DNA of 64,000 bases from IMGVR_UViG_3300024999_000030:268731-332730; one strand, 5' to 3'; counted from the stretch's first letter, positions 2,108 to 32,901 are shown. Notes: generated from the sequence alone by a model not told the origin. Program-made: numbers and translations.

Positions 2108-2926
2108 ATGGCTGGAGATTCCCTTTCTAAACTGGTTGAACAATATTCGCAAGTCTATGGCAGAAAACGCCTTACTAATCAGGAAATGTTCGACAAGATC
2201 AAAGAGTTTCAGGCTACTGAAGATGAAGCGGCTATGATTGAAATGATTGGTGCTAATATTGGTCTCATAATTAAAGACACCTATAGTATTGTTAAGGATT
2301 ACACTCAAGTTGAATCGTATATTGGTAGTGCCATCATTGGCTTTATCGAAGGTGTTAAACATTTTGATGTTGCTAAAAGTGCAGGTTTAACTAATCCAAA
2401 TGGTTATATTTTTGAATGGGTTAGAGCGATGATTCATAAAGATTTTTATAAGGATAAGGCATTTTTATCTGGTCTCACTGGTAAAAATAAAATGATTGTT
2501 AATGCTCTTATCCAGGCAGAGAAGTCTGGGACTCTTTCTACGCCGGATCTTATCGAATCTGTGGCAACTCAATTAAACGAGGATAAGAAAACCGTAACCA
2601 CCGTTCATGCCACCATTGGATCTAAAATTAGTTTGTCTCATATGGACGGTAATGACGTAGTTGATATTCATTATGTTGAACATAATCCAATGGCTGCTGT
2701 TAACATGGCTCATATTAAAACTTCTTTGATGCCTGTTCTTAAAGAAATTTTAACTGAGAGGGAGTTTGATACTGTTCTGTCGCGTATTATGGACGATGAA
2801 ACTTTAGAGACCATTGGTAAGCGTTATGGTGTGTCCAAAGAGGCTGTTCGAATTTATGAAAAGACTGCGTTTAAGAAGCTTCGTGGTGACCATCGGGTCA
2901 AGGCGTTTTTCAATGCCCTGGATTAA
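2108..2926 (+). CDS. Phage sigma-70-family RNA polymerase sigma factor
   Basis: Region 2-like IGANIGLIIK...IGFIEGVKHFD...YIFEWVRAMI and region 4.2 HTH ETLETIGKRYGVSKEAVRIYEKTAFKKLR. AGGAGG RBS. Confidence 0.88.
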   Translation: MAGDSLSKLVEQYSQVYGRKRLTNQEMFDKIKEFQATEDEAAMIEMIGANIGLIIKDTYSIVKDYTQVESYIGSAIIGFIEGVKHFDVAKSAGLTNPNGYIFEWVRAMIHKDFYKDKAFLSGLTGKNKMIVNALIQAEKSGTLSTPDLIESVATQLNEDKKTVTTVHATIGSKISLSHMDGNDVVDIHYVEHNPMAAVNMAHIKTSLMPVLKEILTEREFDTVLSRIMDDETLETIGKRYGVSKEAVRIYEKTAFKKLRGDHRVKAFFNALD

Positions 2927-8619: not shown

Positions 8620-8648
8620 TTGACTTTTTAACATAATAATCTTATATT
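8620..8648 (+). promoter_or_regulatory. Sigma-70-type promoter TTGACT-N17-TATATT
   Basis: TTGACT 8620-8625, TATATT 8643-8648, followed by an AGGAGGAG RBS. Confidence 0.85.
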
Positions 8649-9064: not shown

Positions 9065-9695
9065 AAAATTAGTAGACGAAATAAAAAAAGAAACAGATAT
9101 CCTCAAGCTTGTAGAAGACTTGGGGCTTAGTGTTATTAAGTCTGCGGGTGATCGATGGATTACCCATTGTTTATTTCATGACGAACGGACTCCCAGTATG
9201 ACCCTATACAGGGAGTCAAATAGTTTTTATTGTTATGGGTGCACAGAAAGTGGTGATGTAATATCTTTACTGCAAAAAGCAAAGAACCTCTCATTTATGA
9301 ATGCTGTTAAATTTTTAGCCGAGAGAGGCGGCATAGATTTAGAATTCTCTAAAAAAGCCACGTTCAATTGGGACGGATACGGCGAATACTCTGAAGAGCC
9401 CGGTACCGCGCTCGACTACGAAGACATGTTTACTTTTGTTGCCATAGAAACTCGCAAGCTCATACAGCAAATCAAACAGACTTTCACAGAAGAATCTGTG
9501 GAGTTTAGCGAGGCTATGTCTTCGATGGAGAGTATTTACCAGAAGTTTGACAACGCCGATATGATTGGTGTAAAGACGATGGCACTCTCTCAGCTTGAAG
9601 ACTTAGCAAACGAGCTAAGGGAGATATTAAATGAAAGTGGGAGTAATCGGGGACATTCACCTCGGGGCATCGTATCACTTCGGACACACTCTTAA
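9030..9695 (+). CDS. Stand-alone CHC2 zinc-finger protein (DnaG primase zinc-binding domain plus acidic helical tail)
   Basis: CLFHDERTPSM...FYCYGC...GDVISLLQ...LSFMNAVKFLA. No TOPRIM domain follows. Confidence 0.85.
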   Translation: MSDQPKKSKLDKKLVDEIKKETDILKLVEDLGLSVIKSAGDRWITHCLFHDERTPSMTLYRESNSFYCYGCTESGDVISLLQKAKNLSFMNAVKFLAERGGIDLEFSKKATFNWDGYGEYSEEPGTALDYEDMFTFVAIETRKLIQQIKQTFTEESVEFSEAMSSMESIYQKFDNADMIGVKTMALSQLEDLANELREILNESGSNRGHSPRGIVSLRTHS

Positions 9696-10812
9696 AGATG
9701 GACTTAATTCCAGATTAACGGATTTCCGAAAAACTTTGGCGTTTTGTATCGATAAGGCTGGTGAGTTTGAAGCGAAGATAGTGGTTCTTGCAGGTGACTT
9801 ATTTAGAAATTCTAAACCAGGAACATTTGAACAAGATGCTTTGTGGGAAGAATTAAAACGTGGATACAAAGTGTATGGAATACAATATGTTATCGTGGCG
9901 GGTAATCATGATATGCCATCATATTGTCGTAAAACAATTAGCACCGTAGCTCACAACATCAATGATAATAGTTATATTACAGCTGTTGATACAATCCAAT
10001 CAATTGATTTTATAGATGACTTTAGTATTGTTGCTATTCCATTTTATAACAAAGTAACTGAAAAAATGAGTAGTACAGAAGATGTATTAGCAAAAATAAA
10101 ATCAGAGTTATCTATTTTAAAAACAAACAAGAAAACATTAGCAATATGGCATTGTATCTCAGAGGGAACTATGTTGGGTGATTTTGTTGGTATGGAAGTT
10201 GATGCCCTCAATGAACCAGTAATTCCACTAACCCTTAGTAAACAATACGATATTTCTGTCTTTGGACATGTGCATAGACATAGTGTTATAGCGAAGGGAA
10301 AGAAGTTTGTAATTAATATTGGATCCATGGAAGTTAATGATTTTACTGATTCAGATCAAAATAAGTGGATGATATTATTAGATACGACAGACATGAAACC
10401 ACAGTTTGTTCAGCTTCCAGTAATTAAAGCAACCACTTTACATCTTACATCTTTTGCTTCTATTCTTCCAGATATGGAAGAAACAATTAAAAAAGAGGAC
10501 GTAGAAAATAAAATAGTTAGAATTATAATAGAAACTAATGAAGACGCCCTTAGAACATATAGTGAACAGTTAGCTAAAGAACACATAGAGACACAATTAG
10601 GTGCATATAAATATATGGGGGCTACATTTAAAATAAAATCAGAAGATGAAAAAAATATCAATGTAGATGTTTCTTCGACCCTATCTGCTAGTGGCTCTAT
10701 ATTGTCTCACATAAGAACGTTCTTGGAGGGCCATGATAAAGAACTTATTGATGAGACTATTTCTTATGTTAAAGGCATCCTATCTCAAATTGAAACTCTA
10801 AACGAGGACTAA
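9631..10812 (+). CDS. sbcD: SbcD/Mre11-like metallophosphoesterase nuclease
   Basis: GDIHLG, AGDLF, AGNHD, WH, FGHVH motifs. Directly upstream of the SMC-like ATPase. Confidence 0.9.
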   Translation: MKVGVIGDIHLGASYHFGHTLKDGLNSRLTDFRKTLAFCIDKAGEFEAKIVVLAGDLFRNSKPGTFEQDALWEELKRGYKVYGIQYVIVAGNHDMPSYCRKTISTVAHNINDNSYITAVDTIQSIDFIDDFSIVAIPFYNKVTEKMSSTEDVLAKIKSELSILKTNKKTLAIWHCISEGTMLGDFVGMEVDALNEPVIPLTLSKQYDISVFGHVHRHSVIAKGKKFVINIGSMEVNDFTDSDQNKWMILLDTTDMKPQFVQLPVIKATTLHLTSFASILPDMEETIKKEDVENKIVRIIIETNEDALRTYSEQLAKEHIETQLGAYKYMGATFKIKSEDEKNINVDVSSTLSASGSILSHIRTFLEGHDKELIDETISYVKGILSQIETLNED

Positions 10813-10813
10813 C

Positions 10814-12964
10814 ATGAGACTAATATATCTTGAAATGACAGACTTTATGGCCTATCACCAGCAAAAAATAACATTCAATGAAAACGGATGCTATGTTATT
10901 TTAGGCAGGAATGTAGACCGATATGGAAAATCAAACGGCGTGGGTAAGAGTGCCATCTTTGTGGCTATCTATGCCGCATTATATAATCAGATTCGTGGTA
11001 AAACTTTAGCTCAGGCTATTCACGCAGGTGCAAAGGGATATAAACTTGAGTTGGTATTACAATCTACAGATGGAACATATTATCAGATTCTTAGAAGTCG
11101 TAGAAAGGATGGAACTTCTACAACATTTTTATTTTCGGATAAAACTGGGGAGTTCAAAGAAGACATAAGAATAGACTTAACGTGCCACGATCAAGATGAT
11201 ACACAAGAAAGAATAAATTCTTTATTAAAAATGAATGCAAAGTCTTTTAGTCATTCAGTATATTTTAAAGAGGATATGGCCTCAGCTTTTGCAAGGGCTA
11301 AAAAGGGAGAAAGATTTGAACTAATAAAAAATTCATTACAGATCGATCAATATGATAAGATAGTTAAAATAGCTAAGGTTGAATTAGATAAAATCAATAT
11401 CAGCGTGTCAGAAATATCAAGTTATGTTGTTGCTGCTGAATCTGGTTTAGCTGATATAGATAATAAACTCATTCAACAAAACATCCACAAAAACGATTTA
11501 GATACATATTATGCTAGCCTTTCAGAAATAGATTCTAAGTTAGCTGAAATTGCTGCTATAAAAATTGGAGTATCTGATTTAGAACAAATGAGGGTGACAT
11601 GTACTAATAAAGTAAAAGCAGCTCAAACAAATTTAGAATCCTCAAATAATAGATTCAATGATTTAAATAGAAAAATTAATGAAGCCAATATTAAATTAGA
11701 AGAATATAGAGGGGACCTTGCTAAACTTAGAATACATTATAAGACATTGTTTGATAATAAGAAAACTATTTCAATTCTTCCAGATGAAGAAGTTTCTAAA
11801 TTAAATGAAGCAATTGCAGTATGTAAGGCTGATATCAAACAGAATCAGGGGACAATAGAATCTTCCAATGAAATGATTATAGCTTTAGGAAAAACCAAAG
11901 GAACCTGTTGCCCTACATGTACAAGTACATTAGATAATAAAAAAAGAAATATACTGATTGATATTGCTAATAAAAATATAGAATCAGCTCATATGTCAAA
12001 TGCAGTTTCAAATAAGAAAATGAATGACTATAACATATTAATTCACGGCAACAATATAAATCTTGGTAAACTTAATGATACTATTAAACAACTTGATCAA
12101 CTCACTGCAAAAGGTAATTCCATTAAAGAAGCCGGAGAGGGATTAAAGAGTATTATATCTTCCCTTCAACCAGAATTAAATGTGGCAGCAAAGCATGTTC
12201 AAGATTATACAGAACAACTTACAAATGCTACAATTGAGTCGACGGGTGTTGAACAACAAATATCTTTAAAATATGACGATAAGATAGAATCACTTTTAAG
12301 TACACAGAAGCAGGAACTACTATCTCACATAGCCACTAGCAATCAAAAGATGGGTATTCTTGTGGAGTCTATTAGGGGTATTAGGGAATCCACTAAAGAC
12401 ATTGGTGCCAAGCAAGAAGCTTTATCAGCATTAAACACAAAGAAAATTGTTGTGGAAAATGTAATCGATAGTTGTTCTAAGAAAGGAGGTATACCATCCA
12501 TACTAATTGGTCAAGCATTAAAAGAAATTGAAAAATATGCGAATCAAGCTTTATCAAGTTTTGATGATTATGATACTTTATCTATTAAGTTTATAACATC
12601 TAAACCAGATGAAATAGACATTATGGTTAGAAAGGACCCAGAGTCTGACTTCAGAGAGTTTGATACATTTTCTGGAGCCGAAAGGTTTATTGTTTCATTT
12701 GCGATAAGAATGGCTATGTCTGAAATTCTATCACATAAATATGGCTCAGACCTTAAATTTATTTTATTAGATGAGGCAGGAACAGCTTTAGATGAATACA
12801 ACATGGGTTTGTTTGCTAATATGCTTAAGAGAATGTCTACAGATAAGTTAGTGTTATGTATCACACACCAAAGAGAGCTTAAAGATCATATTCCACAAAC
12901 GATTTTAGTTAAAAGAAGTGGGGGTAAATCAGAGATAGTGGTCAACAATAAGGAGGAAGTTTAA
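10814..12964 (+). CDS. sbcC: SbcC/Rad50-like SMC ATPase
   Basis: Walker A GKSNGVGKS, long coiled coil with CPTC zinc hook, signature FSGAE, Walker B LLDEAG, H-loop ITHQ. Confidence 0.92.
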   Translation: MRLIYLEMTDFMAYHQQKITFNENGCYVILGRNVDRYGKSNGVGKSAIFVAIYAALYNQIRGKTLAQAIHAGAKGYKLELVLQSTDGTYYQILRSRRKDGTSTTFLFSDKTGEFKEDIRIDLTCHDQDDTQERINSLLKMNAKSFSHSVYFKEDMASAFARAKKGERFELIKNSLQIDQYDKIVKIAKVELDKINISVSEISSYVVAAESGLADIDNKLIQQNIHKNDLDTYYASLSEIDSKLAEIAAIKIGVSDLEQMRVTCTNKVKAAQTNLESSNNRFNDLNRKINEANIKLEEYRGDLAKLRIHYKTLFDNKKTISILPDEEVSKLNEAIAVCKADIKQNQGTIESSNEMIIALGKTKGTCCPTCTSTLDNKKRNILIDIANKNIESAHMSNAVSNKKMNDYNILIHGNNINLGKLNDTIKQLDQLTAKGNSIKEAGEGLKSIISSLQPELNVAAKHVQDYTEQLTNATIESTGVEQQISLKYDDKIESLLSTQKQELLSHIATSNQKMGILVESIRGIRESTKDIGAKQEALSALNTKKIVVENVIDSCSKKGGIPSILIGQALKEIEKYANQALSSFDDYDTLSIKFITSKPDEIDIMVRKDPESDFREFDTFSGAERFIVSFAIRMAMSEILSHKYGSDLKFILLDEAGTALDEYNMGLFANMLKRMSTDKLVLCITHQRELKDHIPQTILVKRSGGKSEIVVNNKEEV

Positions 12965-12968
12965 TTGA

Positions 12969-12977
12969 CTATTAATA
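12969..12977 (+). promoter_or_regulatory. CTATTAATA motif (candidate late promoter)
   Basis: Exact motif in the gap after sbcC, heading the 13021-21565 operon. Confidence 0.55.
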
Positions 12978-13020
12978 AAGTTTCCTCCATATGGCGTATC
13001 ACTATGCCTGAGGAGATACT

Positions 13021-13629
13021 ATGACAATCTATATTTCTAGAATCCCTCTTACTGATGAAGAGATAGAAGAGAGAAGGACAGAAGAGGCCGCGTTAGCGGG
13101 GGTAAGAAGCCAGCACTGTGCTTGTGCTTCTCCTAAACCAGATGCCTGTGATGTAGCTTATGACGCCTGTGGAACCCCATTGTATACGATTACCGCTACC
13201 GAAAGAGATCCATATTACATAGATGATTTAGCTAAAGCAGTTCAAAATGGAAATGGCAGAAATACAATCAGAGTTACTGTAGATGGAAACATTCCCATTA
13301 TTAGAAATGTGGGGCACAAAGGATTTGTTTATCCAGGATATGACGGCATTCCAGATAGTGTTAGGAGTGATCACGCATTTAGATATTTAGCAGACGAGCC
13401 TGTAAACGTAGTGTCCACAATACCACAATACGACGGACTTAAGAGAGTGGTTGGGGTGATAGAAAGATCACAAGAATTTGCTAGGTGGTTTATTATTGAA
13501 TCAGAAATTCAAAGCACACCACCTCCAGCTAGATTAACACCCGCGTATTTCCCAAGAGGGAGAGGAGCAGCACCGTGGTGGAAGACCCAGTATCCTAACG
13601 GGTCACCGTCATCGGGCACAACAACATGA
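13021..13629 (+). CDS. Hypothetical protein (202 aa), Cys/Pro-rich
   Basis: GAGGAG RBS. HCAC...C...C cluster; no recognisable family. Confidence 0.75.
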   Translation: MTIYISRIPLTDEEIEERRTEEAALAGVRSQHCACASPKPDACDVAYDACGTPLYTITATERDPYYIDDLAKAVQNGNGRNTIRVTVDGNIPIIRNVGHKGFVYPGYDGIPDSVRSDHAFRYLADEPVNVVSTIPQYDGLKRVVGVIERSQEFARWFIIESEIQSTPPPARLTPAYFPRGRGAAPWWKTQYPNGSPSSGTTT

Positions 13630-14441
13630 TTGATAAAATTAAGAAAGAAAGATTATCATACTCAAAGATAGATTGTTATAAACAATGTCCTTTTAAATAT
13701 AAAAAGATACACATTGATAAGGATGTACCATTTAAAGAATCTATTGCCGTTAGATATGGACAATTTTTACATGGTATTCTTGAGGACTTAGGTAAGGCAA
13801 TCAAGGACAATGATAATGAGTTTCCAGATAATGTAAATGATATAGTATCTAAGTCTTGGAAAAAATATAAGTCGGCACAGAAGATTTTTGATGGTGCATT
13901 AATTAAAGAGGCTGTAGATATCATACATAACGTTGGTAAAAAATTTAGAGCTACGCCTGATGAAAAAATAGTTGAAGTCGAAAAATCATTCAAAATGGAT
14001 TTGGATGATAAATATTATATCCAGGGTAAAATTGATCAGGTTCTTAAAGTGGGAGATAGGTATTTAATTAGGGATTATAAAACAAATGCAGATACTAAAT
14101 ACTTATTAGCTGATCAATTACAACTTAAAATATATGCTATGGCATATAGTAGATTAAATAATATCCCGGCAGATAAGATTGATTGCAGTTATCTTATGTT
14201 AAGAATTGATTGCCAGGAACCTAAATCTAGTTTTGAACAAAAAGATATCGATGAAACAGAAATTTATTTAAAAACAATTATTAGGGAAATGGAAGTATCT
14301 AGATCCACAGGGACATATAAATGTGTAACTGGGGGTTTATGTCCATGGTGTCCTGTATTTGAAAACTGTCCTACAGCTAGTAAAAATCCTAGGTTCTTAA
14401 CTAAGCGAGCTGAATTAAGGAGCCTTGGTAAGGTAGATTAA
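13626..14441 (+). CDS. PD-(D/E)XK exonuclease (RecB/AddB/Cas4-like, probable Fe-S staple)
   Basis: SYSKIDCYKQCPFKY, HGILE, VEVEKSF, GKIDQV, RDYKT, QLKIYA, and C-terminal CPWC...C. Confidence 0.88.
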   Translation: MIDKIKKERLSYSKIDCYKQCPFKYKKIHIDKDVPFKESIAVRYGQFLHGILEDLGKAIKDNDNEFPDNVNDIVSKSWKKYKSAQKIFDGALIKEAVDIIHNVGKKFRATPDEKIVEVEKSFKMDLDDKYYIQGKIDQVLKVGDRYLIRDYKTNADTKYLLADQLQLKIYAMAYSRLNNIPADKIDCSYLMLRIDCQEPKSSFEQKDIDETEIYLKTIIREMEVSRSTGTYKCVTGGLCPWCPVFENCPTASKNPRFLTKRAELRSLGKVD

Positions 14442-17371
14442 TGAGACTCTACAAGTATTCCGATGATAACAAAAATGTTAATGAAGAAACTAAAGATGGT
14501 CTAGAAGAATCAAAACCTCAATCTTCATCAACAATCCCAGAGATAGAGCCTGGGGAAAATGATGAAATGATTGGGATACTTGTAGAGAGTTTTGCCGATA
14601 CTCTTATATCTTCTTTATGGTCAGATGATTTTCCAATTCCACTATCGGAATTGACGCATCACATAGGACAATTAGGAGAAAATAATTTTATAAGGTCCAT
14701 GGAAAATATTAGGACCTTTTTAAGTAAAATTGGGGCTTTTAAATATGAGGTGCCAATCAACAACAAGGAAGATGCCCTCCAATATATACAATCGTTTTCC
14801 CCTCAGATTAAAGATTTAGGTAAGTCACATGCGATGGCACTGTTACAATTACTTGGTATTAGCGGAAGTAGACCAGAGGAAATCTCATTAGAAACCCCTA
14901 TTGGTAGCCCATCAGCTAAAGGCGAAGAAGGTCGTCCAACTCTAGGTGGGACACTTACAGATAAAAATACACCTCTTAGTGAGTTATTAGATAAAGAAAC
15001 CTATGTAGATAATTTATCTAGGATAAAAGATGTTTATGAAGAAATAGAAAATTTAGATCAGTTGTCACCAGAGGAAGCAGATACAAAACGCGGTCAATTA
15101 CTTACACAATTAAAATCAATTGAAAAATCTTTTTCAGCTTTTGATGTGCCAGAACAAGTAGAAAAAAAAGTAGAACAGCTGTCTATTAAATTACAATCGT
15201 CAAACGCTTTTCAAAGTAGAGTAGAAGAACTTAAGGATAAATATGGTTTAGTGGATATGAAAGATCCTAAAATTTTAGCGTATGCTGCTCAGTTAGATAG
15301 GATGCCACCGATTAAACCAGGTGAGTTTAAAGAGGGGTTTCCAGTTGTTGACTTGTCTACTATTCCAGATATAGCTAAGACTGGCGCCAGCGACATAGCA
15401 AAGTTTTTATTGATAGCTAGATTATCAGAGTCTAAAGTCTTCTTAACGAGAAATCAAAATTCTGGTAGTCCGGTTGGTGGAGGAATGGCCACAAAGTGGC
15501 CCACTACTATATCTGGAACAGATACATTTATGGACCATAGATTTTCATCTAAGAAAGCATTCGTGAATTATTCTGGAAATATTAGCTCATTAAGTTCAGA
15601 AGAGTTTAGTAAAATATTAGATAAATATTTAGGGGGGGCAGAGAAAGCCGGTTCGGGTAGACAAACTTCTTATACATGGCCCATGGTGTTTAGTCAGGCC
15701 TTAGGGTCCTTTATAGGTATGCCCGAAGAAGCTATGTTAAACCTTGGTGCAGAATTAGCAGACGCAATAGAGACTGAAGATAAATCTCAAATTAAAGCTG
15801 TGTTATCAAAATATAAATATAATTCATATGGAGTATTAACAGATACTTCTCATGACTCTTTATCTAAAAATAATTATACTTTTAGTTCTATTTGTACTCC
15901 AACTCAAATGGTAAAGTCTTTAGCGGAAGCTAAGGGAACTAATGCTGAAACAATCCATGAAGAAATGAAAGGTCTTTTACCGAATAGTAAAACGCTTCAG
16001 GGGGCTATAGGACAACCAGTATTTGATAATAGAATGCCAATCATTCCAATGCCCCCAGAGGCACTAGTGGCCATTGCTTTCTATGTTGTGAGGTTATTTA
16101 TAGCCACATGTAGAGCTAATGTAATATCAACAATAGAAGAATATAATTCTAATGAAAAAGTTCAATCAGATATAGAATCTGTTATTAATAATTTAATGGA
16201 TAATTTAAATTCATCTTTAGATTCATCTGGCGATTTTCGTTTATCTGGTGTGACTAAAGCATTTACGAGACCTATTATACAAACCACTAAGCTTCAAAAT
16301 TTTGGGGTATCGGTGGATAAACTTAAATCATTAGCAATGGAAGGTATTAAATTATCATTGCAAAGTGGAGCATTATTATCTTCATCGGAAGCCTCATTCG
16401 ATTTTAAAAAACAGTCGTCATTTAATAGAGAGGCAATTTATAATATTGCCACTACTTTATCTAAAGCCACATTAGATAGTATCCAAGTTGGGGATAAAAC
16501 CATCCCGACCAATATGACTAGTGTAACTTCTGGAACTCGTCTTACGGATTTTAGTTCCAGAAGATTATTAGATGTAGAAAAAGCCGAACAGCATGGTAGA
16601 TATTCATTATCTCAGCCCGAGCAAATTAAAGCAAGCACATCTGAAACTGTTCGTAGATCTATGGGTAGAATGTCAAGTCTTGTTGATAATTGTAATCTAG
16701 TATCTATCATTGGAGTGGAACAAAGCGAAGATGCCACTGTATTTGCCATTCGGTCTAACTCTAGTCCCGTAATACAAAATGGCGGTAAGGGAGCAAAGAT
16801 TACTATCTATACAAATACGGATGGAAAAAGAGAAGAGGTATTATCTTCCACAACTGATAGAATTTCAGTTAAACCATCAATTGGGGACGATAGTGGTAGG
16901 CTGGCATACAAGTTGTTTATATCACCAGCAGTTGATTTTTCTATGGAAGACTTTGATTATGAGCTTAGTATAGGTCAAGAAATTATGTATCAAGCTAGAT
17001 TAGCCACTGAGAAAAACACTCTTGATGTTTGGATTAGAGAAGTTAACAAAGAATTATTTAAGTTTAATGAAATGAAGTCTGAAATGATTCAAGCTATTTC
17101 TTCTAATAATTTATCAAGGGCTATGGAAGTTATGAGAATTAATGAGCTATCTTTAAGGGTGGACCTAAATAGATTTAAAACACTTAATTCAGATTACAAA
17201 TCTATTGTAGATTCTGTAATGAATAAAATTAAAGATAAAGAAGACGTAGATGCATATTCTATTTTTATAAAAGATTATGTATTTAAATGTATAGTGGCTA
17301 TTAATCAAATCAGAACTCAAATTGTTGATTTTAAAAAACAAGCAGCTATTATTCTTGGGGTGGGTAAATGA
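14441..17371 (+). CDS. Large hypothetical protein (976 aa), candidate virion/internal protein
   Basis: Long ORF coupled at both ends (TAATG, ATGA), with an acidic N-terminus after MRLYKYS. No domain recognised. Confidence 0.8.
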   Translation: MRLYKYSDDNKNVNEETKDGLEESKPQSSSTIPEIEPGENDEMIGILVESFADTLISSLWSDDFPIPLSELTHHIGQLGENNFIRSMENIRTFLSKIGAFKYEVPINNKEDALQYIQSFSPQIKDLGKSHAMALLQLLGISGSRPEEISLETPIGSPSAKGEEGRPTLGGTLTDKNTPLSELLDKETYVDNLSRIKDVYEEIENLDQLSPEEADTKRGQLLTQLKSIEKSFSAFDVPEQVEKKVEQLSIKLQSSNAFQSRVEELKDKYGLVDMKDPKILAYAAQLDRMPPIKPGEFKEGFPVVDLSTIPDIAKTGASDIAKFLLIARLSESKVFLTRNQNSGSPVGGGMATKWPTTISGTDTFMDHRFSSKKAFVNYSGNISSLSSEEFSKILDKYLGGAEKAGSGRQTSYTWPMVFSQALGSFIGMPEEAMLNLGAELADAIETEDKSQIKAVLSKYKYNSYGVLTDTSHDSLSKNNYTFSSICTPTQMVKSLAEAKGTNAETIHEEMKGLLPNSKTLQGAIGQPVFDNRMPIIPMPPEALVAIAFYVVRLFIATCRANVISTIEEYNSNEKVQSDIESVINNLMDNLNSSLDSSGDFRLSGVTKAFTRPIIQTTKLQNFGVSVDKLKSLAMEGIKLSLQSGALLSSSEASFDFKKQSSFNREAIYNIATTLSKATLDSIQVGDKTIPTNMTSVTSGTRLTDFSSRRLLDVEKAEQHGRYSLSQPEQIKASTSETVRRSMGRMSSLVDNCNLVSIIGVEQSEDATVFAIRSNSSPVIQNGGKGAKITIYTNTDGKREEVLSSTTDRISVKPSIGDDSGRLAYKLFISPAVDFSMEDFDYELSIGQEIMYQARLATEKNTLDVWIREVNKELFKFNEMKSEMIQAISSNNLSRAMEVMRINELSLRVDLNRFKTLNSDYKSIVDSVMNKIKDKEDVDAYSIFIKDYVFKCIVAINQIRTQIVDFKKQAAIILGVGK

Positions 17372-18060
17372 AAGAGTTTGCATATGTAGTTTCCAGACTC
17401 AAAACAGCCGCTCAACAAACCGGTGAAACTTGCTATATAGTTGGTGGAGCCGTGAGAGATATAATATCTCTTAAGAAGATTAAGGATGTTGATACGGTGG
17501 TGGCAATAAATCCTGAAAAATTTGCCTCAGCATTAGCCTCTACAACGGAGGGAGCAACCGCAGAAGAGGTTCATGCTCCATTTCCATTGTGGTCAGTGGA
17601 TATTAGCGACGTGTCTGTAGATGTAGTTGGGTTAAGAGGAAAGAGTCTTCAAGAAGATATTCAACATAGAAATTTTACTATCAATACAATATACTATGAC
17701 GTAGTAAGAGATAGGTTTGAAGATCCAACTGGAAAAGGGTTTACTGATCTTTATAATGGAGTAATTAATACTGTTACTCCAGATTCTTTTGTTTTTTTTA
17801 GTTCTAGTCCACATGAAATTAATAGCATATTTATAGCAATAAGATTAGTAGCGGATTCCGGATTTAAATTAAGTGAACAATTAAAAAGCGGAATTAGGAA
17901 AGCCTTAGAGCATGGCCTCATTCCCGCTGAGTTATCTAAGAGATCTAAAAAGGAAATACTAAGAACTAGGCTTTCACATAATTTTAAGACCAAAGCTCTC
18001 CCCATAATTGAAGAGCTTGGTTTGGAGCATTTTTATGAAGCTGCCGCTGTTTCTCCATAA
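17368..18060 (+). CDS. Short class II tRNA nucleotidyltransferase/poly(A) polymerase-family head domain (divergent)
   Basis: YIVGGAVRD...DVD, EDIQHRNFTIN (canonical RRDFTIN), DPTGKGFTDL. Lacks the flexible loop and a clear EDxxR. Confidence 0.8.
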   Translation: MKEFAYVVSRLKTAAQQTGETCYIVGGAVRDIISLKKIKDVDTVVAINPEKFASALASTTEGATAEEVHAPFPLWSVDISDVSVDVVGLRGKSLQEDIQHRNFTINTIYYDVVRDRFEDPTGKGFTDLYNGVINTVTPDSFVFFSSSPHEINSIFIAIRLVADSGFKLSEQLKSGIRKALEHGLIPAELSKRSKKEILRTRLSHNFKTKALPIIEELGLEHFYEAAAVSP

Positions 18061-21000
18061 AACCGCCCAGGCGGGATTAAATCAAGCTGTATTTAATATG
18101 GTAGCAGCCGCCACTGATGCAGGATTTAATGCACCAATCTATTTAGCTGGTGGTGCCGCTAGAGATATCATTCTTGGAAAGTCTCCTAATGACCTAGATG
18201 TTATGATAGAAAAAGAAAATGGAGCTGAAGAATTTGGAAAAATTTATTTAAACTATTGTGAAAAAAATAACATTAAAGTTTCTACTCCAGGTAAAGCTGT
18301 GGGTGCTAATTTTGGTGTATATAAATTTAGGCACGATGGTTTAGAATTAGATTTTGCTACTTCGCGTACCGATACTTATACTGAAGATTCTAGGAAGCCT
18401 ACAGTTGAATCTGCAAGCCTTAATGAAGATGCGGAGAGAAGAGACTTCAGTATTAATGCTATGTATGTTTGTATATACGGCACTCCCTCTGTTCAACCAG
18501 ATGACAAGGTTGATATTGGAGGAAGAGAGTTTGGAGTTTATGACCCAACTCATAAAGGAATTAAAGATTTAAAAAATGGAGTTATTAGTTTTGTAAATGA
18601 TGATCATGATTTTACTTTAAGCGAGGACCCCATTAGGGCTCTTAGGGCAGTAAAATTTTCTGGTAGAAAGTTTGGAGAAAAAACTTTTACAATTGAACCA
18701 GAGACATCTAAAAGTATTAAAGATTTTTTAAATTCAGAAAAAGGTAAAGAGCTATATCTTAAAAAGGTTAAACCGGAGAGGCCCTGGAAAGAATTAAAAG
18801 ATATTCTAACTGCTCAGAATTTAAAAGAAGCTATGAAACAGTTTAAGGAAACTGGAGTCAGGGACTTTATTTTTGATTTACCAAAAGAAGAATTTAATAG
18901 TTGGGACATGGATCAACTTAACAAACATCATAATCTTAATTTATATGATCACACAATCTTTGCTATGGAAAATCTTGGAGAAGGACTTCATACTATGGGG
19001 GAAAATGGCCTTCCCATTTCCAAAGACACTGAAGCCACTATACAACTAGCAATGTTATTACATGATGTGGGAAAAAGACATAAAGAATTTAAACCTAGAG
19101 AAGATGGAACAGTTAAATATTTAAAGCATGAAAATAAATCTACAGATGTTTTAAAAAAATATGTTTGGCCGAAGCTGGCACAGTTACCACCAAAAACTCA
19201 AGAGATTGTTAATTACTTTGTGAAGAGTCATATGGATTTTCATAAGTATCCCAAGAAGGATGAGGGAGATATTAGATTTTTAAAGCAGATGATTTATAAT
19301 CTATTGCCTAAAACTTTTGGTGGTTCTCTTGGAGCAGATAAAGAAAAACAGATGGAGATAATGTCTTATGTTGTGAGTTTCTTTGGTAGCGCAGATTCTT
19401 CTGCAAAACAATTAGAGGATGAAGAAAAAAATAAACTAACAAAAGACTACGAAGACTTTGGTAATAGACTTAGATTGTCTAAACCAAGGAACCTTTTGTT
19501 TAATGTTGCTGCTCCAATCATCAAAGAAATATTGACTAATCATGGAGTTCAAATTTATAATAGTGCAATCGGATCTATATATGAATACTTAAATGTTTAT
19601 ATTATTAACGTTTCAGAAGAACCAAAAGATATAATTCAATTTGTATCTAAGCAGACAGAACAAATTCTAACCAATGTAAAAAATTTTGTTAAAGAATTTA
19701 TAAATGAGCATGAAGGAACAAATGAACAAGAGGCGCTTGATAAATATCTTGCCAATGCTCATAAGTTTTCTGGATCAATTAAACATAGGTTTAAAAAAGA
19801 TGCAATCTTTGAAGTGTTGTCGGATTTATATAAAGATAAAAAAATAAATGGAGATGTAAAAATGCCTAAGCTCGTTATTGCTAAATATAAATCTAAAAAG
19901 AAACTCGATACCGGTACAGTTGTATATGAGTATGGAGAAGCCGATAAAAAGAAACGAGCTAAAAAAAAGGCACGTCAAGTGAGAAAGGTGTTTCAAAATA
20001 TTAATAAAATTAAAAAATCTTTTGAAAAAGATCTAAAGTCCGATGATAAAAAAATACAAATGACGGCTTTAGCTGTGGGAATTATTTATCATATTTATGA
20101 GCGGGTAGGCGATAGAGCTAATGTAGGAACAGGCGTTACTTCATTTAGAAAGAAACATATTACAGTAAAAGGAAATAAAGTACAGTTTAAATATGTGGGA
20201 AAATCACATATGAAACAAGATAAAACATTAACAGATTCAACTATAGCCAAAATCATTAAGGAGAATTTAGAAGGTAAAAGTAGTAATGCATATCTGTTTG
20301 ACTATACAGATGAAAATGGTAAAAAATTTGATGTATATTCCAGTGACATTAATGAATATCTTAAATCTTTTAACATTACCGCTAAAGATTTAAGGGCCCA
20401 CGCAGCTAATGATATTTTAATTGCTAAACTTAAATCAGCTGGAAAAGCTAAAGGTGAATCTCCAGAAGAAAAAGAAAAATGGCGTAAAGAAAAACTCAAA
20501 GAATTAATTGAAGAAACAGCTGATGAAATTGGTCATACTCCCGGCATTTGCAAATCATCATATATAGACCCATCTCTTATGGATGAATATATAGCCAGTG
20601 GTAAAATTATTAAATTAGCTGCTGATTTTGATTTGACAGTAATAATTAAACTTGCGGATATTTCTGTTAATCCAAAGATTAAAGAGTTAATGGATAGAGA
20701 ATTCACACCAGAAGAACAATCAATCATTTCAAATCCACATGATGTAAGATCTACAATTAATGATGAAGTGTTCTTACAGGCCTTAAGTAAAGCTAAACAA
20801 CAAGGAACTTTATCTGGTTTATTAGAAATAGTAGAAGATAATGACCCTTCTGCTTTTGGAGTTACCCCGGTTATAGTTGGTGGTAAAGCTATTCCCATTA
20901 TTGGGCTCAATGTTAATAAAATTAAAGAAGAGGCAGCCCAGAAAGGTAAATCGATTGAAGAGGTGTTGTCAGAACAGGTTAAACAATTTTTAGGAGTCAT

Positions 21001-21565
21001 GGCCCATGAGAAAGAACATGTCGAAGGCAAAGGTGAACCTGAAGCTGAAAGAGTACAAAAAGATGAAGTGTCTAAACAAACTTCTCAAGAAGGGTCATCA
21101 TCTAAGCTAACAATGGGCTCTCTTAAGTTGGCATCTACAGATAAATCTCTTTTTCAAAAACTTGGTATTAGAGATATTAGTAATGATACCTTATTAAAAG
21201 TATCCAATAATGTTTTAAAAATTCTTGGAATCCCAAATACCAATCTTAATATAGGACTATTGTCTCTTGGGTATCTTGTTATGCTTGGTAATCACCCCTA
21301 TAGGTCAGAATGGAATATTAGACAAGCTACGGGTTTATCTGAACCAATTAATATTAAGGAAGCACAGACCCTATATAATATTTTAGATAACGCAATAGAT
21401 GAGAAACCTATTGAAGAAGATAAGGCAAAAGAATATTATTCTTTTTCCGATGAAGATAAAATGAATCTAGGTGAACTACAATCACTTAAGTGGGAATCTG
21501 AACCATCCTATGCGGCTGGAACAGGTATGGGATTTTATCCTCAAACACATCCTTTTAATTACTAA
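18035..21565 (+). CDS. Multidomain protein: CCA-adding tRNA nucleotidyltransferase + HD domain + type IB topoisomerase + HExxH segment
   Basis: LAGGAARD...DLD, DFATSRTDTY...SRKP, EDAERRDFSINA, EDPIRALRAVKF; HD domain DHT...LLHDVGK...HE; Topo IB motifs ERVG, VGKS, AKDLR, GHTPGICKSSYIDP; AHEKEH. A GGAG RBS favours the start at 18035. Confidence 0.9.
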   Translation: MKLPLFLHKTAQAGLNQAVFNMVAAATDAGFNAPIYLAGGAARDIILGKSPNDLDVMIEKENGAEEFGKIYLNYCEKNNIKVSTPGKAVGANFGVYKFRHDGLELDFATSRTDTYTEDSRKPTVESASLNEDAERRDFSINAMYVCIYGTPSVQPDDKVDIGGREFGVYDPTHKGIKDLKNGVISFVNDDHDFTLSEDPIRALRAVKFSGRKFGEKTFTIEPETSKSIKDFLNSEKGKELYLKKVKPERPWKELKDILTAQNLKEAMKQFKETGVRDFIFDLPKEEFNSWDMDQLNKHHNLNLYDHTIFAMENLGEGLHTMGENGLPISKDTEATIQLAMLLHDVGKRHKEFKPREDGTVKYLKHENKSTDVLKKYVWPKLAQLPPKTQEIVNYFVKSHMDFHKYPKKDEGDIRFLKQMIYNLLPKTFGGSLGADKEKQMEIMSYVVSFFGSADSSAKQLEDEEKNKLTKDYEDFGNRLRLSKPRNLLFNVAAPIIKEILTNHGVQIYNSAIGSIYEYLNVYIINVSEEPKDIIQFVSKQTEQILTNVKNFVKEFINEHEGTNEQEALDKYLANAHKFSGSIKHRFKKDAIFEVLSDLYKDKKINGDVKMPKLVIAKYKSKKKLDTGTVVYEYGEADKKKRAKKKARQVRKVFQNINKIKKSFEKDLKSDDKKIQMTALAVGIIYHIYERVGDRANVGTGVTSFRKKHITVKGNKVQFKYVGKSHMKQDKTLTDSTIAKIIKENLEGKSSNAYLFDYTDENGKKFDVYSSDINEYLKSFNITAKDLRAHAANDILIAKLKSAGKAKGESPEEKEKWRKEKLKELIEETADEIGHTPGICKSSYIDPSLMDEYIASGKIIKLAADFDLTVIIKLADISVNPKIKELMDREFTPEEQSIISNPHDVRSTINDEVFLQALSKAKQQGTLSGLLEIVEDNDPSAFGVTPVIVGGKAIPIIGLNVNKIKEEAAQKGKSIEEVLSEQVKQFLGVMAHEKEHVEGKGEPEAERVQKDEVSKQTSQEGSSSKLTMGSLKLASTDKSLFQKLGIRDISNDTLLKVSNNVLKILGIPNTNLNIGLLSLGYLVMLGNHPYRSEWNIRQATGLSEPINIKEAQTLYNILDNAIDEKPIEEDKAKEYYSFSDEDKMNLGELQSLKWESEPSYAAGTGMGFYPQTHPFNY

Positions 21566-21571
21566 TTATAT

Positions 21572-21612
21572 AAGTCAACACCATGTATGCTATTTATGGT
21601 GTTGACTTTTTC
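21572..21612 (+). terminator. 13-bp perfect inverted repeat plus U-tract, overlapping the next promoter's -35
   Basis: AAGTCAACACCAT (21572-21584) / ATGGTGTTGACTT (21596-21608), 11-nt loop, running into TTTTT, just after the 21565 stop. Confidence 0.65.
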
Positions 21613-21630
21613 TATTATAATAATTATATT
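21602..21630 (+). promoter_or_regulatory. Sigma-70-type promoter TTGACT-N17-TATATT
   Basis: TTGACT 21602-21607, TATATT 21625-21630. Confidence 0.85.
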
Positions 21631-21651
21631 TATCTTAGACGGGAGGAAAGA

Positions 21652-22002
21652 ATGAATAAACTTATTTGTAGGGGTGGTAAAACCTCTAATGTGGCTTTAG
21701 TAGCTGATGATATTCCTTATGGAAACTTAATTGATTTTAAGTGGACTATTTCCGTAGCTGATCAATATTCTAATTTTTTTGCTCAAGCAGAAAATAATCA
21801 AGATAGTGCTCCATACGTATGGATTGAAGGTCCCAATTGTGAATTAGAATATGAAAGTACCCATGGCCTATGGAAGGTTGTTAGTAATGGAACACCAGCG
21901 GGTACAGCAGTATATTTCAATGGGTCTAAATTAGATAACATGTTAATTCAAGTTTTAATTGTAGCGTACGGATTGTCAGCTGAGGTATCTCCTGGGTCTT
22001 AA
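21652..22002 (+). CDS. Hypothetical protein (beta-rich)
   Basis: GGGAGG RBS and the promoter position give a start at 21652 (MNKLICRGG...), not 21583. Confidence 0.75.
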   Translation: MNKLICRGGKTSNVALVADDIPYGNLIDFKWTISVADQYSNFFAQAENNQDSAPYVWIEGPNCELEYESTHGLWKVVSNGTPAGTAVYFNGSKLDNMLIQVLIVAYGLSAEVSPGS

Positions 22003-31568: not shown

Positions 31569-32310
31569 CCTTCATAGAGATTATTTTATGAGACGTGGGT
31601 ATAGTTCTGACGCTATGGATTCTTTTAGTGTCGGAACTTTTCCCTTAGATTTAATTGTTGCCTCATTAAACTGTAATCAGTTAATTAATCTTAAGATTTT
31701 ATACGCACCTAAGCCAGGTTCCACATTATATTATTCGGAGTTCAGGGATAGAATTATTATTCCAGTACATGATGCATATGGTAAGGTAGTGGGTATTACT
31801 GGGAGATTGTTAACAGAGGATCCAAATAGAGGTAAATATTACAACAGCGATTACCCAAAGGTATCTACATTATTTAATTTACATAGAGCTAAAAATGAAA
31901 TTATAAAATCTGGATATGCCGTAGTAGTAGAGGGTAATTTAGATGTGGTGGCTATGTGGGATGCCGGAATTAAAAATGTTGTGGCCTGTACTGGGGCATT
32001 TATTACTCCAAAGCAAGTTCGTAAGTTACTTAGGTATACCGATAAAGTTTTAGTGGCAACTGATAACGATAATGCAGGTCACGCTTCTTATACTAAGTTT
32101 CTTAAAAATTCAGCGTATTATATTGAAAACAAATCGCTTAGCTCTATTAGAATTATTCCTCCATTCGGCTTAAAAGATCCAGATGATTTTATTAAAAAAT
32201 ATGGAGCTAACACATGTCGGGAGTGGGTTGCCGCAGGCGCCCGGCATCTCACATGCAACGATGGCAACGATACTACTAGCTTCAAAGGAGTGTGGAATGT
32301 CTGTAAATAA
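31513..32310 (+). CDS. dnaG: DnaG-type primase catalytic/TOPRIM domain lacking the zinc-binding domain
   Basis: FRDRIIIPV, GITGR, KYYNS, LFNL, VVVEGNLDV, ACTG, ATDNDNAG, KDPDDFI. Confidence 0.9.
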   Translation: MCLDPISKLVELCHANLSNLHRDYFMRRGYSSDAMDSFSVGTFPLDLIVASLNCNQLINLKILYAPKPGSTLYYSEFRDRIIIPVHDAYGKVVGITGRLLTEDPNRGKYYNSDYPKVSTLFNLHRAKNEIIKSGYAVVVEGNLDVVAMWDAGIKNVVACTGAFITPKQVRKLLRYTDKVLVATDNDNAGHASYTKFLKNSAYYIENKSLSSIRIIPPFGLKDPDDFIKKYGANTCREWVAAGARHLTCNDGNDTTSFKGVWNVCK

Positions 32311-32887
32311 AGGACGCAGTAAGCGTTATCAATATAAGTTTAGAGAAATACCAGTGGAATCTATGGATGTTTTTTCCGATAACATGGCCCTTCACAATGC
32401 AGAAAATATATCTAGTGCACAAAAACAAAAGCAAAAAGAAGGAATTCTAGGTGCTATTTTTGAAATAGCAGACGAACAATTAACACAAAGACAAAAAGAT
32501 ATTTTGTATTGTAGATATGTTTTGGGCTTAACTCAGGTTGAAATAGGTAAGCGACTCGGAATTACTCAGAGTTGTGTTTCCCTTCAAATTAATGGTATTC
32601 CTAATTATACTTATTCTAAGAAACATGGTGGAATTTTACCTAAGCTTAAGAAAATGTGTGTTGGAGAAGCGGCTGTTGCCTCTGGGTCGGCTACAACTGA
32701 AGAGACAGACGCCCTTCTTAAAACAATCAAGAGTAGAATTAAAAAAGCTCATCCCGAATATACAGAAATAGATTTAACTAGAAAGGCAGTAGAGAGCTTA
32801 TCAAACATGGGGAAAATATCAGATTTATTTGAAATGTTAGTTAAAGATGACATTGAGTATGACGAAGAGGATCTTTCTCACACATAA
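32297..32887 (+). CDS. Sigma-70 region 4-type HTH protein (no region 2)
   Basis: LTQRQKDILYCRYVLGLTQVEIGKRLGITQSCVS. AAGGAG RBS before ATG 32297. Confidence 0.8.
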   Translation: MSVNKGRSKRYQYKFREIPVESMDVFSDNMALHNAENISSAQKQKQKEGILGAIFEIADEQLTQRQKDILYCRYVLGLTQVEIGKRLGITQSCVSLQINGIPNYTYSKKHGGILPKLKKMCVGEAAVASGSATTEETDALLKTIKSRIKKAHPEYTEIDLTRKAVESLSNMGKISDLFEMLVKDDIEYDEEDLSHT

Positions 32888-32892
32888 TCTTC

Positions 32893-32901
32893 CTATTAAT
32901 A
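32893..32901 (+). promoter_or_regulatory. CTATTAATA motif (candidate late promoter) at the start of the head block
   Basis: Exact motif in the intergenic gap at the replication/structural boundary. Confidence 0.6.

What the first reader, a model, noticed from the sequence alone, without database searches (positions are those of the whole stretch)
12969..21612. A late-type operon of nucleic-acid enzymes inserted among replication genes
Seen: the block starts at the CTATTAATA motif otherwise typical of the head genes. Its five genes are tightly coupled (ATGA, TAATG, ATGA and 26-nt overlaps), and it ends at a strong hairpin. The genes on either side use TTGACT-N17-TATATT. Three of the five products have K-x-A/S leaders. 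Inference: a 'cargo cassette' (nuclease, 976-aa orphan, two nucleotidyltransferases, Topo IB) that is made late, packaged, and used early in the next infection, possibly against tRNA-damaging host defences.
Basis: inference. Interest (0 to 1): 0.68.

Follow-up and report, generated by a model that had tools for sequence, protein, structure and literature searches.

The report
Conserved phage operon with fused topoisomerase
In a 333-kb groundwater phage, a five-gene operon of DNA- and RNA-handling enzymes has its own conserved phage-type promoter inside the replication region; nothing shows that its products are packed into the virus particle.

Summary
Genes 13021-21565 form one tightly overlapping unit, and CTATTAATA lies 52 nt before the first ATG. 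A 14-bp hairpin with a U-run closes the unit. TTGACT-N17-TATATT promoters flank it on both sides.

The window is the end of a 332,730-bp huge phage from groundwater. CTATTAATA is that genome's main non-sigma70 promoter-like element. It precedes the sheath, baseplate, terminase-portal and protease operons, but also RNR, an AAA ATPase and a sigma factor gene.

The motif sits before the same cassette in four relatives, down to about 36% protein identity and with a different upstream neighbour. So the cassette is an old, vertically kept unit, not a recent insert.

Its products are:
- a 202-aa unknown protein;
- a Cas4/AddB-like Fe-S PD-(D/E)XK nuclease;
- a 976-aa strict orphan;
- a head-only class-II nucleotidyltransferase;
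- a CCA/HD enzyme fused in frame to a topoisomerase IB with a zincin-like HExxH tail.

In distant relatives the small nucleotidyltransferase itself is fused to the topoisomerase.

"Late" is plausible but untested, because no RNA runs exist. "Packaged cargo" has no support: the K-x-A/S leaders are at chance level and no shared leader exists. The most likely role is late intracellular DNA processing plus tRNA 3'-end repair.

The parts
8620..8648 (+). Upstream sigma70-like promoter TTGACT-N17-TATATT, heading the primase-SbcD-SbcC genes. No terminator-like site of note lies between it and the cassette.
9631..12964 (+). SbcD (9631-10812) and SbcC (10814-12964). They are the conserved upstream neighbours of the cassette in most relatives.
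12969..12977 (+). CTATTAATA promoter-like element, a single -10-like block with no conserved -35, 52 nt before the first ATG. It is conserved before the same gene in L036, L003, L041 and L018.
13021..13629 (+). Gene A, 202 aa. It has a Cys-rich variable N-terminus and a conserved C-terminal AYFPRGxGxAPWW. No Pfam, PHROG or NCBIfam match. The family is confined to this phage clade (11 further members).
13626..14441 (+). Gene B, 271 aa, a PD-(D/E)XK nuclease of the Cas4/AddB type. D137...D150-x-K152 fits the catalytic motif, and C239-x2-C242-x5-C248 plus N-terminal Cys fit the Fe-S cluster pattern.
14441..17371 (+). Gene C, 976 aa, a strict orphan. Among 1.84 billion representatives it matches only sister-phage proteins. 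The equally placed 1081-aa gene of L018 shows no detectable similarity. The model is mostly helical with a beta region near residues 754-828 and a long C-terminal coiled region, at pLDDT 37.
17368..18060 (+). Gene D, 230 aa, a class-II nucleotidyltransferase with the head domain only. GGAVRD and DVD are present; the EDxxR specificity motif is absent. In distant relatives this part is fused to the topoisomerase.
18035..19861 (+). First 609 residues of gene E, a CCA-adding-type nucleotidyltransferase. It has the head domain, an RNA-binding neck, EDPIR, RRD and a weak HD domain (LHDVGK). It is present in the window and in L036, and absent in L003, L018 and the distant relatives.
19862..20620 (+). 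Topoisomerase IB catalytic domain of gene E. It starts at the Met that begins the stand-alone gene in L003, and the old GGAGA ribosome-binding site is kept. The catalytic R, K, R, H and Y line up with Deinococcus and poxvirus TopIB.
20729..21103 (+). Zincin-like metallohydrolase domain in the tail of gene E. The invariant HExxHxxG..E lies at about 21005-21037. The closest folds are YbeY and Wss1.
21104..21565 (+). Conserved helical C-terminal part of gene E (NPYRxEW, KWExxPS, FPQxHPxNY), of unknown function.
21572..21613 (+). Intrinsic-terminator-like hairpin with a 14-bp stem, a 9-nt loop and a U5 tract. L036 keeps it with a different inner stem. L003 and L018 lack it.
21602..21630 (+). Downstream sigma70-like promoter TTGACT-N17-TATATT. 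Its -35 lies inside the 3' arm of the hairpin. It is conserved after the cassette in L036, L003 and L018.
2108..2926 (+). Phage sigma-70-family factor, 272 aa, with a weak match to a late-sigma PHROG. Its gene is itself preceded by CTATTAATA.
32183..32887 (+). Second phage sigma-like gene, 234 aa, with sigma region 4. It is the last gene before the CTATTAATA at 32893. It is a candidate reader of the motif; this is inference.

Best explanation
The block is a real polycistronic operon, conserved in a clade of roughly 330-345-kb huge phages from groundwater and other environmental metagenomes.

It carries its own phage-type promoter, CTATTAATA. This is a single -10-like element without a -35, the same design as T4 late promoters. 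It is most likely read by host RNA polymerase carrying one of the two phage sigma factors. The operon would then be boosted after the sigma70-driven replication genes, at the same time as the sheath, baseplate, terminase-portal and protease operons.

Its products most likely work inside the infected cell on late DNA transactions. The Cas4/AddB-like nuclease, next to SbcCD, would resect ends and process recombination or concatemer intermediates. Topoisomerase IB would relax the replicating and packaging 333-kb genome.

The topoisomerase always travels with a class-II nucleotidyltransferase, either fused or adjacent, and with a zincin-like tail whose roles are unknown.

In this lineage a full CCA/HD enzyme was inserted in frame in front of the topoisomerase. 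That adds tRNA 3'-end repair for a phage whose 29 tRNA genes already encode CCA.

Shown: the anatomy, the conservation, the domain content and the catalytic motifs. Inferred: the timing, the sigma factor used and the cellular role.
For: - Coupled genes and a terminator.
- The motif is enriched between genes, is strand-specific and sits 32-76 nt before start codons.
- The motif is conserved before gene A in L036, L003, L041 and L018, even where the upstream gene is a thioredoxin rather than SbcC.
- A sigma70-like promoter is conserved directly after the cassette.
- The motif precedes sheath-like, virion, baseplate, terminase-portal and protease genes.
- The phage has two sigma genes.
- Synteny with SbcCD, trigger factor, PHP and DnaE is conserved, and cassette proteins diverge like their neighbours: 53-81% identity against 50-82%.
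- Domains and motifs.
- Nucleotidyltransferase-TopoIB fusions of 807-823 aa occur in relatives.
- The CCA-Topo frame is continuous in an independent study's contig and in L036.
- All 29 tRNA genes encode CCA.
Against: - There are no expression data, so 'late' rests on motif sharing alone.
- The same motif also precedes RNR, an AAA ATPase, a sigma gene and possibly a radical-SAM gene. It may therefore mark a middle or general phage-sigma class.
- No terminator lies between the promoter at 8620 and the cassette, so early read-through is possible.
- Two of the five proteins (A and C) have no assignable function. The fast-evolving protein C is not explained by a housekeeping DNA role.
- No known pathway needs a nucleotidyltransferase joined to a TopoIB.
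Confidence: 0.55

Rival explanations
1. The cassette is made late, its proteins are packed into the capsid, and they are delivered with the DNA to act at the start of the next infection. Precedents would be the poxvirus core topoisomerase, or T4 internal proteins and phage 'polyvalent' proteins, acting for example against tRNA- or DNA-targeting host defences.
For: - The promoter type is shared with head and tail operons.
- Protein C evolves so fast that the equally placed gene of L018 is unrecognisable, as is common for proteins at the host interface.
- The large multidomain protein has a zincin-like domain, a domain type I recall from injected polyvalent proteins.
- Poxvirus TopIB is a virion enzyme (my knowledge).
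Against: - K-x-A/S is at chance level.
- No N-terminal leader is shared with any other protein of the genome.
- No cassette protein matches a virion or packaging family.
- The same promoter drives clearly non-virion enzymes.
- The cassette sits in conserved synteny inside the replication and recombination module.
- Early genes use sigma70-like promoters, so no packaged transcription machinery is needed.
Confidence: 0.13
2. The motif is not a late switch. The cassette is expressed mainly with the replication genes, by read-through from the sigma70-like promoter at 8620. CTATTAATA would then be a middle-class or auxiliary promoter, or a regulator site that only tunes expression.
For: - There is no convincing terminator between 8648 and 13021.
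- The neighbours are SbcCD, primase and DnaE.
- The motif also precedes RNR, an ATPase and a sigma gene.
Against: - The motif is kept before the cassette in L018, where the upstream gene and a 560-nt spacer are different.
- It is kept as an invariant block in otherwise diverged spacers.
- It heads the clearly structural operons.
Confidence: 0.2
3. The nucleotidyltransferase-TopoIB-zincin protein acts on RNA rather than DNA, as an RNA cleavage, end-healing and tailing enzyme. The TopoIB fold would cut or join RNA-containing strands, a YbeY-like metallonuclease domain would cut RNA, and the nucleotidyltransferase would extend 3' ends. The cassette would then be an RNA repair or RNA-processing module.
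For: - The best fold matches of the tail domain are YbeY endoribonucleases: Z 8.0, 115 aligned residues, rmsd 3.8.
- A class-II nucleotidyltransferase is always fused or adjacent.
- A CCA/HD repair enzyme was recruited into the same polypeptide.
- Vaccinia TopIB can cleave at ribonucleotides (my knowledge).
Against: - Z 8 is at the level of typical best chance matches for this search (note). Wss1 and other minimal zincin proteases match nearly as well.
- The model is of moderate quality, pLDDT 61.
- The cassette partners are DNA enzymes: SbcCD and the Cas4/AddB-like nuclease.
- The motif is HExxH. My recollection is that YbeY uses an HxxxH-type metal site; I did not check this against a YbeY sequence here.
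Confidence: 0.1

Closest known systems
T4-type late promoters (TATAAATA, read by gp55 with gp33 and the sliding clamp)
   Same: A single AT-rich -10-like octamer with no conserved -35. It is used before structural operons. The phage has its own sigma-family factor, with a weak late-sigma PHROG match. In T4, as I recall, late promoters also drive non-virion DNA enzymes such as endonuclease VII.
   Different: The sequence is (C)TATTAATA. The two phage sigma proteins keep a region 4, unlike gp55 as I recall it. Timing and factor dependence are untested.
Poxvirus/bacterial type IB topoisomerases (vaccinia and variola Top1, Deinococcus TopIB)
   Same: Pfam Topoisom_I scores above its cut-off. A profile match to 2f4q, 2h7f and 1a41 lines up the catalytic R, K, R, H and Y.
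   Different: Here the enzyme is joined to a class-II nucleotidyltransferase at its N-terminus and to a roughly 320-aa tail with a zincin-like domain. TopoIB is rare in deposited phages, at 7 of 50,697 records. I found no description of this architecture in the paper library.
Bacterial multifunctional CCA-adding/repair enzyme (class-II nucleotidyltransferase with HD domain) and phage tRNA nucleotidyltransferases (phrog_2244)
   Same: The first 609 residues of the fifth protein have the head domain, the RNA-binding neck, GGxxRD...DxD, RRD, EDxxR and an HD-like LHDVGK. Huge phages are known to carry CCA-adding enzymes (PMC7162821).
   Different: It lies below the NCBIfam equivalog cut-offs and is fused in frame to a topoisomerase. 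The second, 230-aa enzyme has only the head domain and lacks EDxxR.
Cas4/AddB-family PD-(D/E)XK nucleases with an Fe-S cluster; phage recombination exonucleases (phrog_69)
   Same: PDDEXK_1 at 90.7 bits and phrog_69 at 1.8e-27. D...DxK and CxxCx5C motifs are present. It lies next to SbcCD.
   Different: There is no helicase partner and no CRISPR context. It is co-translated with two clade-specific unknown proteins.
Wss1/SprT DNA-protein-crosslink proteases and YbeY metallo-RNases (minimal zincin folds)
   Same: The motif HExxHxxG..E is invariant in eight sequences. Fold matches are YbeY Z 8.0, Wss1 Z 6.2, minigluzincins Z 5.1-5.3 and a DPC-repair protease entry (6mdx) Z 5.1.
   Different: There is no sequence-family match. 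The scores are borderline and the model is only moderate. No activity is known.

Membership tests
Type IB topoisomerase (Pfam PF01028) | The catalytic domain matches the family model above its curated cut-off. | tested here: met
   77.7 bits against a 23.7-bit cut-off, at residues 647-850 of the 1185-aa frame.
Type IB topoisomerase (Pfam PF01028) | Catalytic Arg, Lys, Arg and His plus the nucleophile Tyr. | tested here: met
   ERVGdR, GKS, KDLR, GHTP and SSYIDP are invariant in 8 sequences. They align with the corresponding stretches of 2f4q and 2h7f. Which residues are catalytic is taken from my knowledge of the family.
Type IB topoisomerase (Pfam PF01028) | Relaxes supercoiled DNA through a 3'-phosphotyrosyl intermediate. 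| not testable with these tools
   Needs an enzyme assay.
CCA-adding tRNA nucleotidyltransferase (class II) | Head domain with GGxxRD and the DxD carboxylates. | tested here: met
   Both proteins: GGAVRD...DVD and GGAARD...DLD. PolyA_pol scores 65 and 75 bits.
CCA-adding tRNA nucleotidyltransferase (class II) | Neck motif EDxxR, which templates C and A, plus body and tail for tRNA binding. | tested here: inconclusive
   The large enzyme has SEDPIRALR and PolyA_pol_RNAbd. The 230-aa enzyme lacks the motif and everything beyond the head and neck, so it fails this feature.
CCA-adding tRNA nucleotidyltransferase (class II) | Reaches the NCBIfam equivalog cut-off. | tested here: not met
   The best score is 111 bits against a 438.8-bit cut-off for the large enzyme, and 56 against 305 for the small one. 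I describe them as CCA-type and head-only class-II enzymes, not as proven CCA-adding enzymes.
Cas4/AddB-type PD-(D/E)XK nuclease | PDDEXK_1 domain above its cut-off, a D...(D/E)xK motif and a four-Cys Fe-S pattern. | tested here: met
   90.7 bits against a 22-bit cut-off. D137 and D150-Y-K152 are present. The Cys are C17/C21 plus C239-x2-C242-x5-C248.
T4-like late promoter class | A lone -10-like octamer without a -35, located before late (structural) genes. | tested here: met
   Information content is confined to the 9-mer. It precedes sheath-like, virion, baseplate, terminase-portal and protease genes. It also precedes non-structural genes.
T4-like late promoter class | Activity only after replication starts, and dependence on a phage sigma. 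| not testable with these tools
   No RNA run holds the phage.
Capsid-packaged internal or ejected proteins (T4 IP/Alt type) | A shared N-terminal capsid-targeting leader or protease site. | tested here: not met
   No N-terminal similarity links cassette proteins to each other or to other proteins. K-x-[AS] is at the background rate.
Capsid-packaged internal or ejected proteins (T4 IP/Alt type) | Presence in purified virions. | not testable with these tools
   The phage is uncultured.
Zincin metallohydrolases (Wss1/SprT, YbeY, minigluzincins) | An HExxH helix on a small beta-sheet/helix core. | tested here: inconclusive
   HExxHxxG..E is invariant. The model has pLDDT 61. Scores are Z 8.0 for YbeY and 6.2 for Wss1, and the best Foldseek E-value is 0.02. 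No Pfam match.
Intrinsic terminator | A GC-containing hairpin followed by a U-run at the end of the last gene. | tested here: met
   dG -20.1 and z -6.2 with U5. L036 keeps it with a changed inner stem, dG -26.6. L003 and L018 lack it.

The most novel reading that the evidence does not exclude
The nucleotidyltransferase-TopoIB-zincin protein may be a new kind of composite enzyme of huge phages. One version: the Wss1/SprT-like domain clears the enzyme's own trapped covalent DNA adducts while the nucleotidyltransferase heals or tags the freed 3' end. Another version: the protein is loaded into the capsid and injected, like the poxvirus core topoisomerase, to act on the incoming genome or on host defences. 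In both, the fast-evolving ~1000-aa neighbour would be its host-facing partner.
Probability: 0.15. Interest if true: 0.75.

Novelty: new variant of a known kind. Interest (0 to 1): 0.45.

Why it matters
It gives a usable transcription map for an uncultured 333-kb phage. Sigma70-like promoters serve the replication genes, a T4-late-like CTATTAATA class serves particle genes and a few enzyme operons, and two phage sigma factors are candidate switches.

It also defines a conserved cassette whose key protein joins a class-II nucleotidyltransferase, a type IB topoisomerase (rare in phages) and a zincin-like domain. I found no description of this architecture. The repeated fusion of the first two parts argues that they act on one substrate, which can be tested with purified protein.

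Finally, it removes an attractive but unsupported idea, packaged cargo, from the record unless proteomics says otherwise.

Tried and rejected
- **Close relatives among deposited phages:** none by DNA. The 976-aa protein has none by tblastn.
- **The 976-aa orphan:** the word search, an exhaustive profile search of 1.84 billion representatives, the ESM Atlas and an AlphaFold model (pLDDT 37) all left it unexplained. A profile comparison with the equally placed L018 protein found nothing.
- **The 202-aa protein:** no family match. Atlas leads are at chance level.
- **Complex prediction** of the 230-aa nucleotidyltransferase with the Topo-tail part gave no verdict, score 0.00. This is not evidence either way.
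- **RNA evidence:** no RNA run holds the phage. The DNA contigs laid served only to confirm the fusion frame.
- **Internal sigma70-like site at 19532-19561** (11 of 12 matches). I considered it as a promoter for the Topo part. The same regex found no such site at the equivalent place in L036, and the scan as a whole is at shuffle level, so I treat it as chance.
- **CCA gene and Topo gene as separate ORFs in L036:** the split in the gene calls comes from a run of N in that scaffold. The junction itself is in frame.
- **DNA of several relatives' contigs** could not be fetched. Only their gene tables were used.
- **The 485-kb phage LR745208** has a TopoIB but none of the cassette.
Full report
**Setting.** The window is the last 64 kb of a single 332,730-bp contig with 38% GC, almost all genes on one strand and overlapping ends. 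It is a virus record rated 100% complete. The DNA occurs in groundwater metagenomes of three studies, and no RNA run holds it. Deposited phages hold no near relative. It is an uncultured huge phage.

**Check of the observation.**
- The five ORFs are 13021-13629 (202 aa), 13626-14441 (271 aa), 14441-17371 (976 aa), 17368-18060 (230 aa) and 18035-21565 (1176 aa).
- CTATTAATA is at 12969-12977, 52 nt before the first ATG.
- After the last stop codon, a 14-bp hairpin at 21572-21608 (dG -20.1, z -6.2) is followed by U5. Its 3' arm contains the TTGACT of the next promoter.
- TTGACT-N17-TATATT occurs five times in the window against 0.09 expected, always between genes, including 8620 and 21602 on either side of the block.
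- The K-x-A/S 'leaders' do not stand up. The pattern occurs near the N-terminus of 18-25% of all 263 larger proteins of this genome, so 3 of 5 gives P about 0.07. By my reading of the N-termini, two of the three cases are the homologous N-termini of the two nucleotidyltransferases.

**What CTATTAATA is.**
- Genome-wide, TATTAATA is the 8-mer most enriched between genes (30 of 54 copies).
- With the preceding C it occurs 22 times on the coding strand and 5 on the other. Seventeen of the 22 lie in the 8% of the genome that is non-coding (P 4e-15).
- Sites lie mostly 32-76 nt before start codons, sometimes right after terminator-like hairpins.
- Aligned sites share nothing but the 9-mer, so there is no -35. 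That is the design of T4 late promoters, as I know them.
- Genes behind such sites include a tail-sheath-like 1334-aa protein, a virion structural protein, a baseplate wedge protein and an M23-peptidase tail protein. They also include the operon that ends in TerL and portal, and the prohead protease.
- The motif also precedes ribonucleotide reductase, an AAA ATPase, a sigma-70-family gene and, without the C, a radical-SAM gene.
- The phage has two sigma-family genes. One is behind a CTATTAATA site (2108-2926). The other is the last gene before the site at 32893 (32183-32887).
- The motif is therefore a phage-specific promoter class that includes the particle genes. Calling it 'late' is reasonable but untested, and it is not reserved for structural proteins.

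**Conservation.**
- Relatives were found through the proteins.
- L036 is about 85% identical at the protein level, L003 about 70% and L041 about 70%. L018 is 36% identical in gene A, and its topoisomerase fusion P0011 is 37% identical. All four carry CTATTAATA at the same place before gene A.
- In L018 the upstream gene is a thioredoxin followed by a 560-nt spacer instead of SbcC, yet the motif is kept.
- A sigma70-like promoter follows the cassette in L036, L003 and L018.
- The terminator hairpin is kept in L036 with a different inner stem, and is absent in L003 and L018.
- Gene tables of further relatives, including a 344-kb contig, show the same order: primase, SbcD, SbcC, gene A, PD-(D/E)XK nuclease, a 1,091-1,191-aa gene, nucleotidyltransferase-topoisomerase, small genes/UDG, trigger-factor-like, Hc1, PHP, DnaE.
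- Between the window and L003, cassette proteins are 53-81% identical and their neighbours 50-82%. GC is alike at 0.341 against 0.325 and 0.364.
- The cassette is therefore an old resident of the replication and recombination module, not a recent insert.

**The proteins.**
- *A (202 aa)* has no family match and belongs to a clade-restricted family.
- *B* is a Cas4/AddB-type PD-(D/E)XK nuclease with D...DxK and a CxxCx5C Fe-S pattern.
- *C (976 aa)* is a strict orphan. An exhaustive profile search of 1.84 billion representatives found only sister-phage proteins. The models are poor. The equally placed 1081-aa gene of L018 is unrecognisable.
- *D (230 aa)* is a head-only class-II nucleotidyltransferase. 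It has intact GGxxRD and DxD but lacks the EDxxR motif.
- *E* has three parts: a CCA-type nucleotidyltransferase with RNA-binding neck, EDxxR and a weak HD domain; a type IB topoisomerase; and a 320-aa tail.
- The topoisomerase part matches Deinococcus and poxvirus TopIB, and the catalytic R, K, R, H and Y line up.
- The tail carries an invariant HExxHxxG..E. In a moderate model (pLDDT 61) it folds as a small zincin-like domain. The best matches are YbeY (Z 8.0, 115 residues, rmsd 3.8) and Wss1 (Z 6.2), and the best Foldseek E-value is 0.02. This is suggestive, not proven.

**A fusion story.**
- In L003 the topoisomerase-tail protein is a separate 564-aa gene. It starts at the Met that is residue 610 of the window's protein, and the CCA part is absent.
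- In the more distant relatives P0007-P0011, the small nucleotidyltransferase (38% identical to D) is fused directly to the topoisomerase-tail, giving 807-823 aa.
- In the window and L036 the small enzyme is separate. A full CCA-type enzyme sits in frame before the topoisomerase, and the old ribosome-binding site and Met are kept.
- A contig from an independent study spans 17939-20358 without a single difference, so the frame is real at the DNA level.
- In three other viral contigs (L026-L028) a nucleotidyltransferase lies 1.3 kb before a TopoIB.
- TopoIB itself is rare in deposited phages, at 7 of 50,697 records. I found no paper describing this architecture.
- The repeated joining of a class-II nucleotidyltransferase to this topoisomerase argues for a shared substrate. 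What that substrate is remains open.

**tRNA angle.** The phage has 29 tRNA genes and all encode their 3'-CCA. The CCA/HD part would therefore serve repair rather than synthesis, as in bacteria with encoded CCA (my knowledge). However, the CCA part is present only in the window and L036, so it is an add-on and not the reason the cassette exists.

**Packaging.** Nothing supports it.
- No leader is shared.
- No cassette protein matches a virion family.
- The promoter class is shared with plain enzymes.
- The sigma70-like promoters before the replication genes in the window show that early expression needs no packaged machinery.
- No terminator separates the cassette from the sigma70-like promoter at 8620, so it may also be read early with SbcCD.
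- The fast evolution of protein C and the multidomain nature of E keep the idea alive at low probability.

**Verdict.** The unit is a conserved, separately promoted operon of DNA- and RNA-end enzymes. It is most likely boosted together with the particle genes, for late DNA processing and tRNA repair inside the cell. The new element is the nucleotidyltransferase-TopoIB-zincin architecture and its conserved cassette.

Noticed in passing
genome 11061-17463, 30281-33549 and 179810-180473 (outside the window; loci L004, L005, L012, L013): There are 29 tRNA genes, all with an encoded 3'-CCA. One has anticodon CTA (amber-suppressor-like, genome 14708-14783), although the window's genes read cleanly under code 11.
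   Followed up: partly
window 22365-23648: A trigger-factor-like gene (Trigger_N and Trigger_C domains) lies just downstream of the cassette. It is conserved at the same place in the relatives whose locus reaches that far.
   Followed up: partly
window 43867-55833: A 3988-aa ORF lies directly before the large terminase (55835-57817) and portal (57832-60648) genes, in an operon headed by a TATTAATA site at 42468.
   Followed up: no
window 2108-2926 and 32183-32887: There are two phage sigma-70-family genes. The first lies behind a CTATTAATA site. The second is the last gene before the CTATTAATA at 32893, after which no sigma70-like site was found in the window. This hints at a sigma cascade.
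   Followed up: partly
genome 169002-181822 (loci L012, L013): Inverted-repeat words CCAGTATCT / AGATACTGG cluster in a mixed-strand region of small genes. They may be operator or terminator elements of another regulatory class.
   Followed up: no
window 29865-31127 and 57832-60648; genome 121678-124647: The UvsX/RecA-like gene and the ribonucleotide reductase both match phrog_9666 internally. The portal carries an internal stretch (aa 382-474) that matches unrelated PHROGs. These may be inteins or inserted elements.
   Followed up: no
protein P0003 (ENA, 1.8-kb contig): A 542-aa predicted protein joins a DNA polymerase B exonuclease N-part to a piece 96% identical to residues ~500-638 of the 976-aa orphan. 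It is either an assembly chimera or a recombinant relative.
   Followed up: no
window 19532-19561: A TTGACT-N18-TATAAT site (11 of 12 matches) lies inside the CCA part, about 300 nt before the internal Met of the topoisomerase part. No matching site was found at the equivalent place in L036, so it is probably chance.
   Followed up: partly
window 21583-22002: The listed 139-aa ORF starts inside the terminator hairpin. The likely real start is the ATG at 21652, behind GGGAGGAAAGA, giving 116 aa.
   Followed up: yes
window 7302-8618: A 438-aa HNH endonuclease gene (phrog_1314) lies among the replication genes, just before the sigma70-like promoter at 8620.
   Followed up: no
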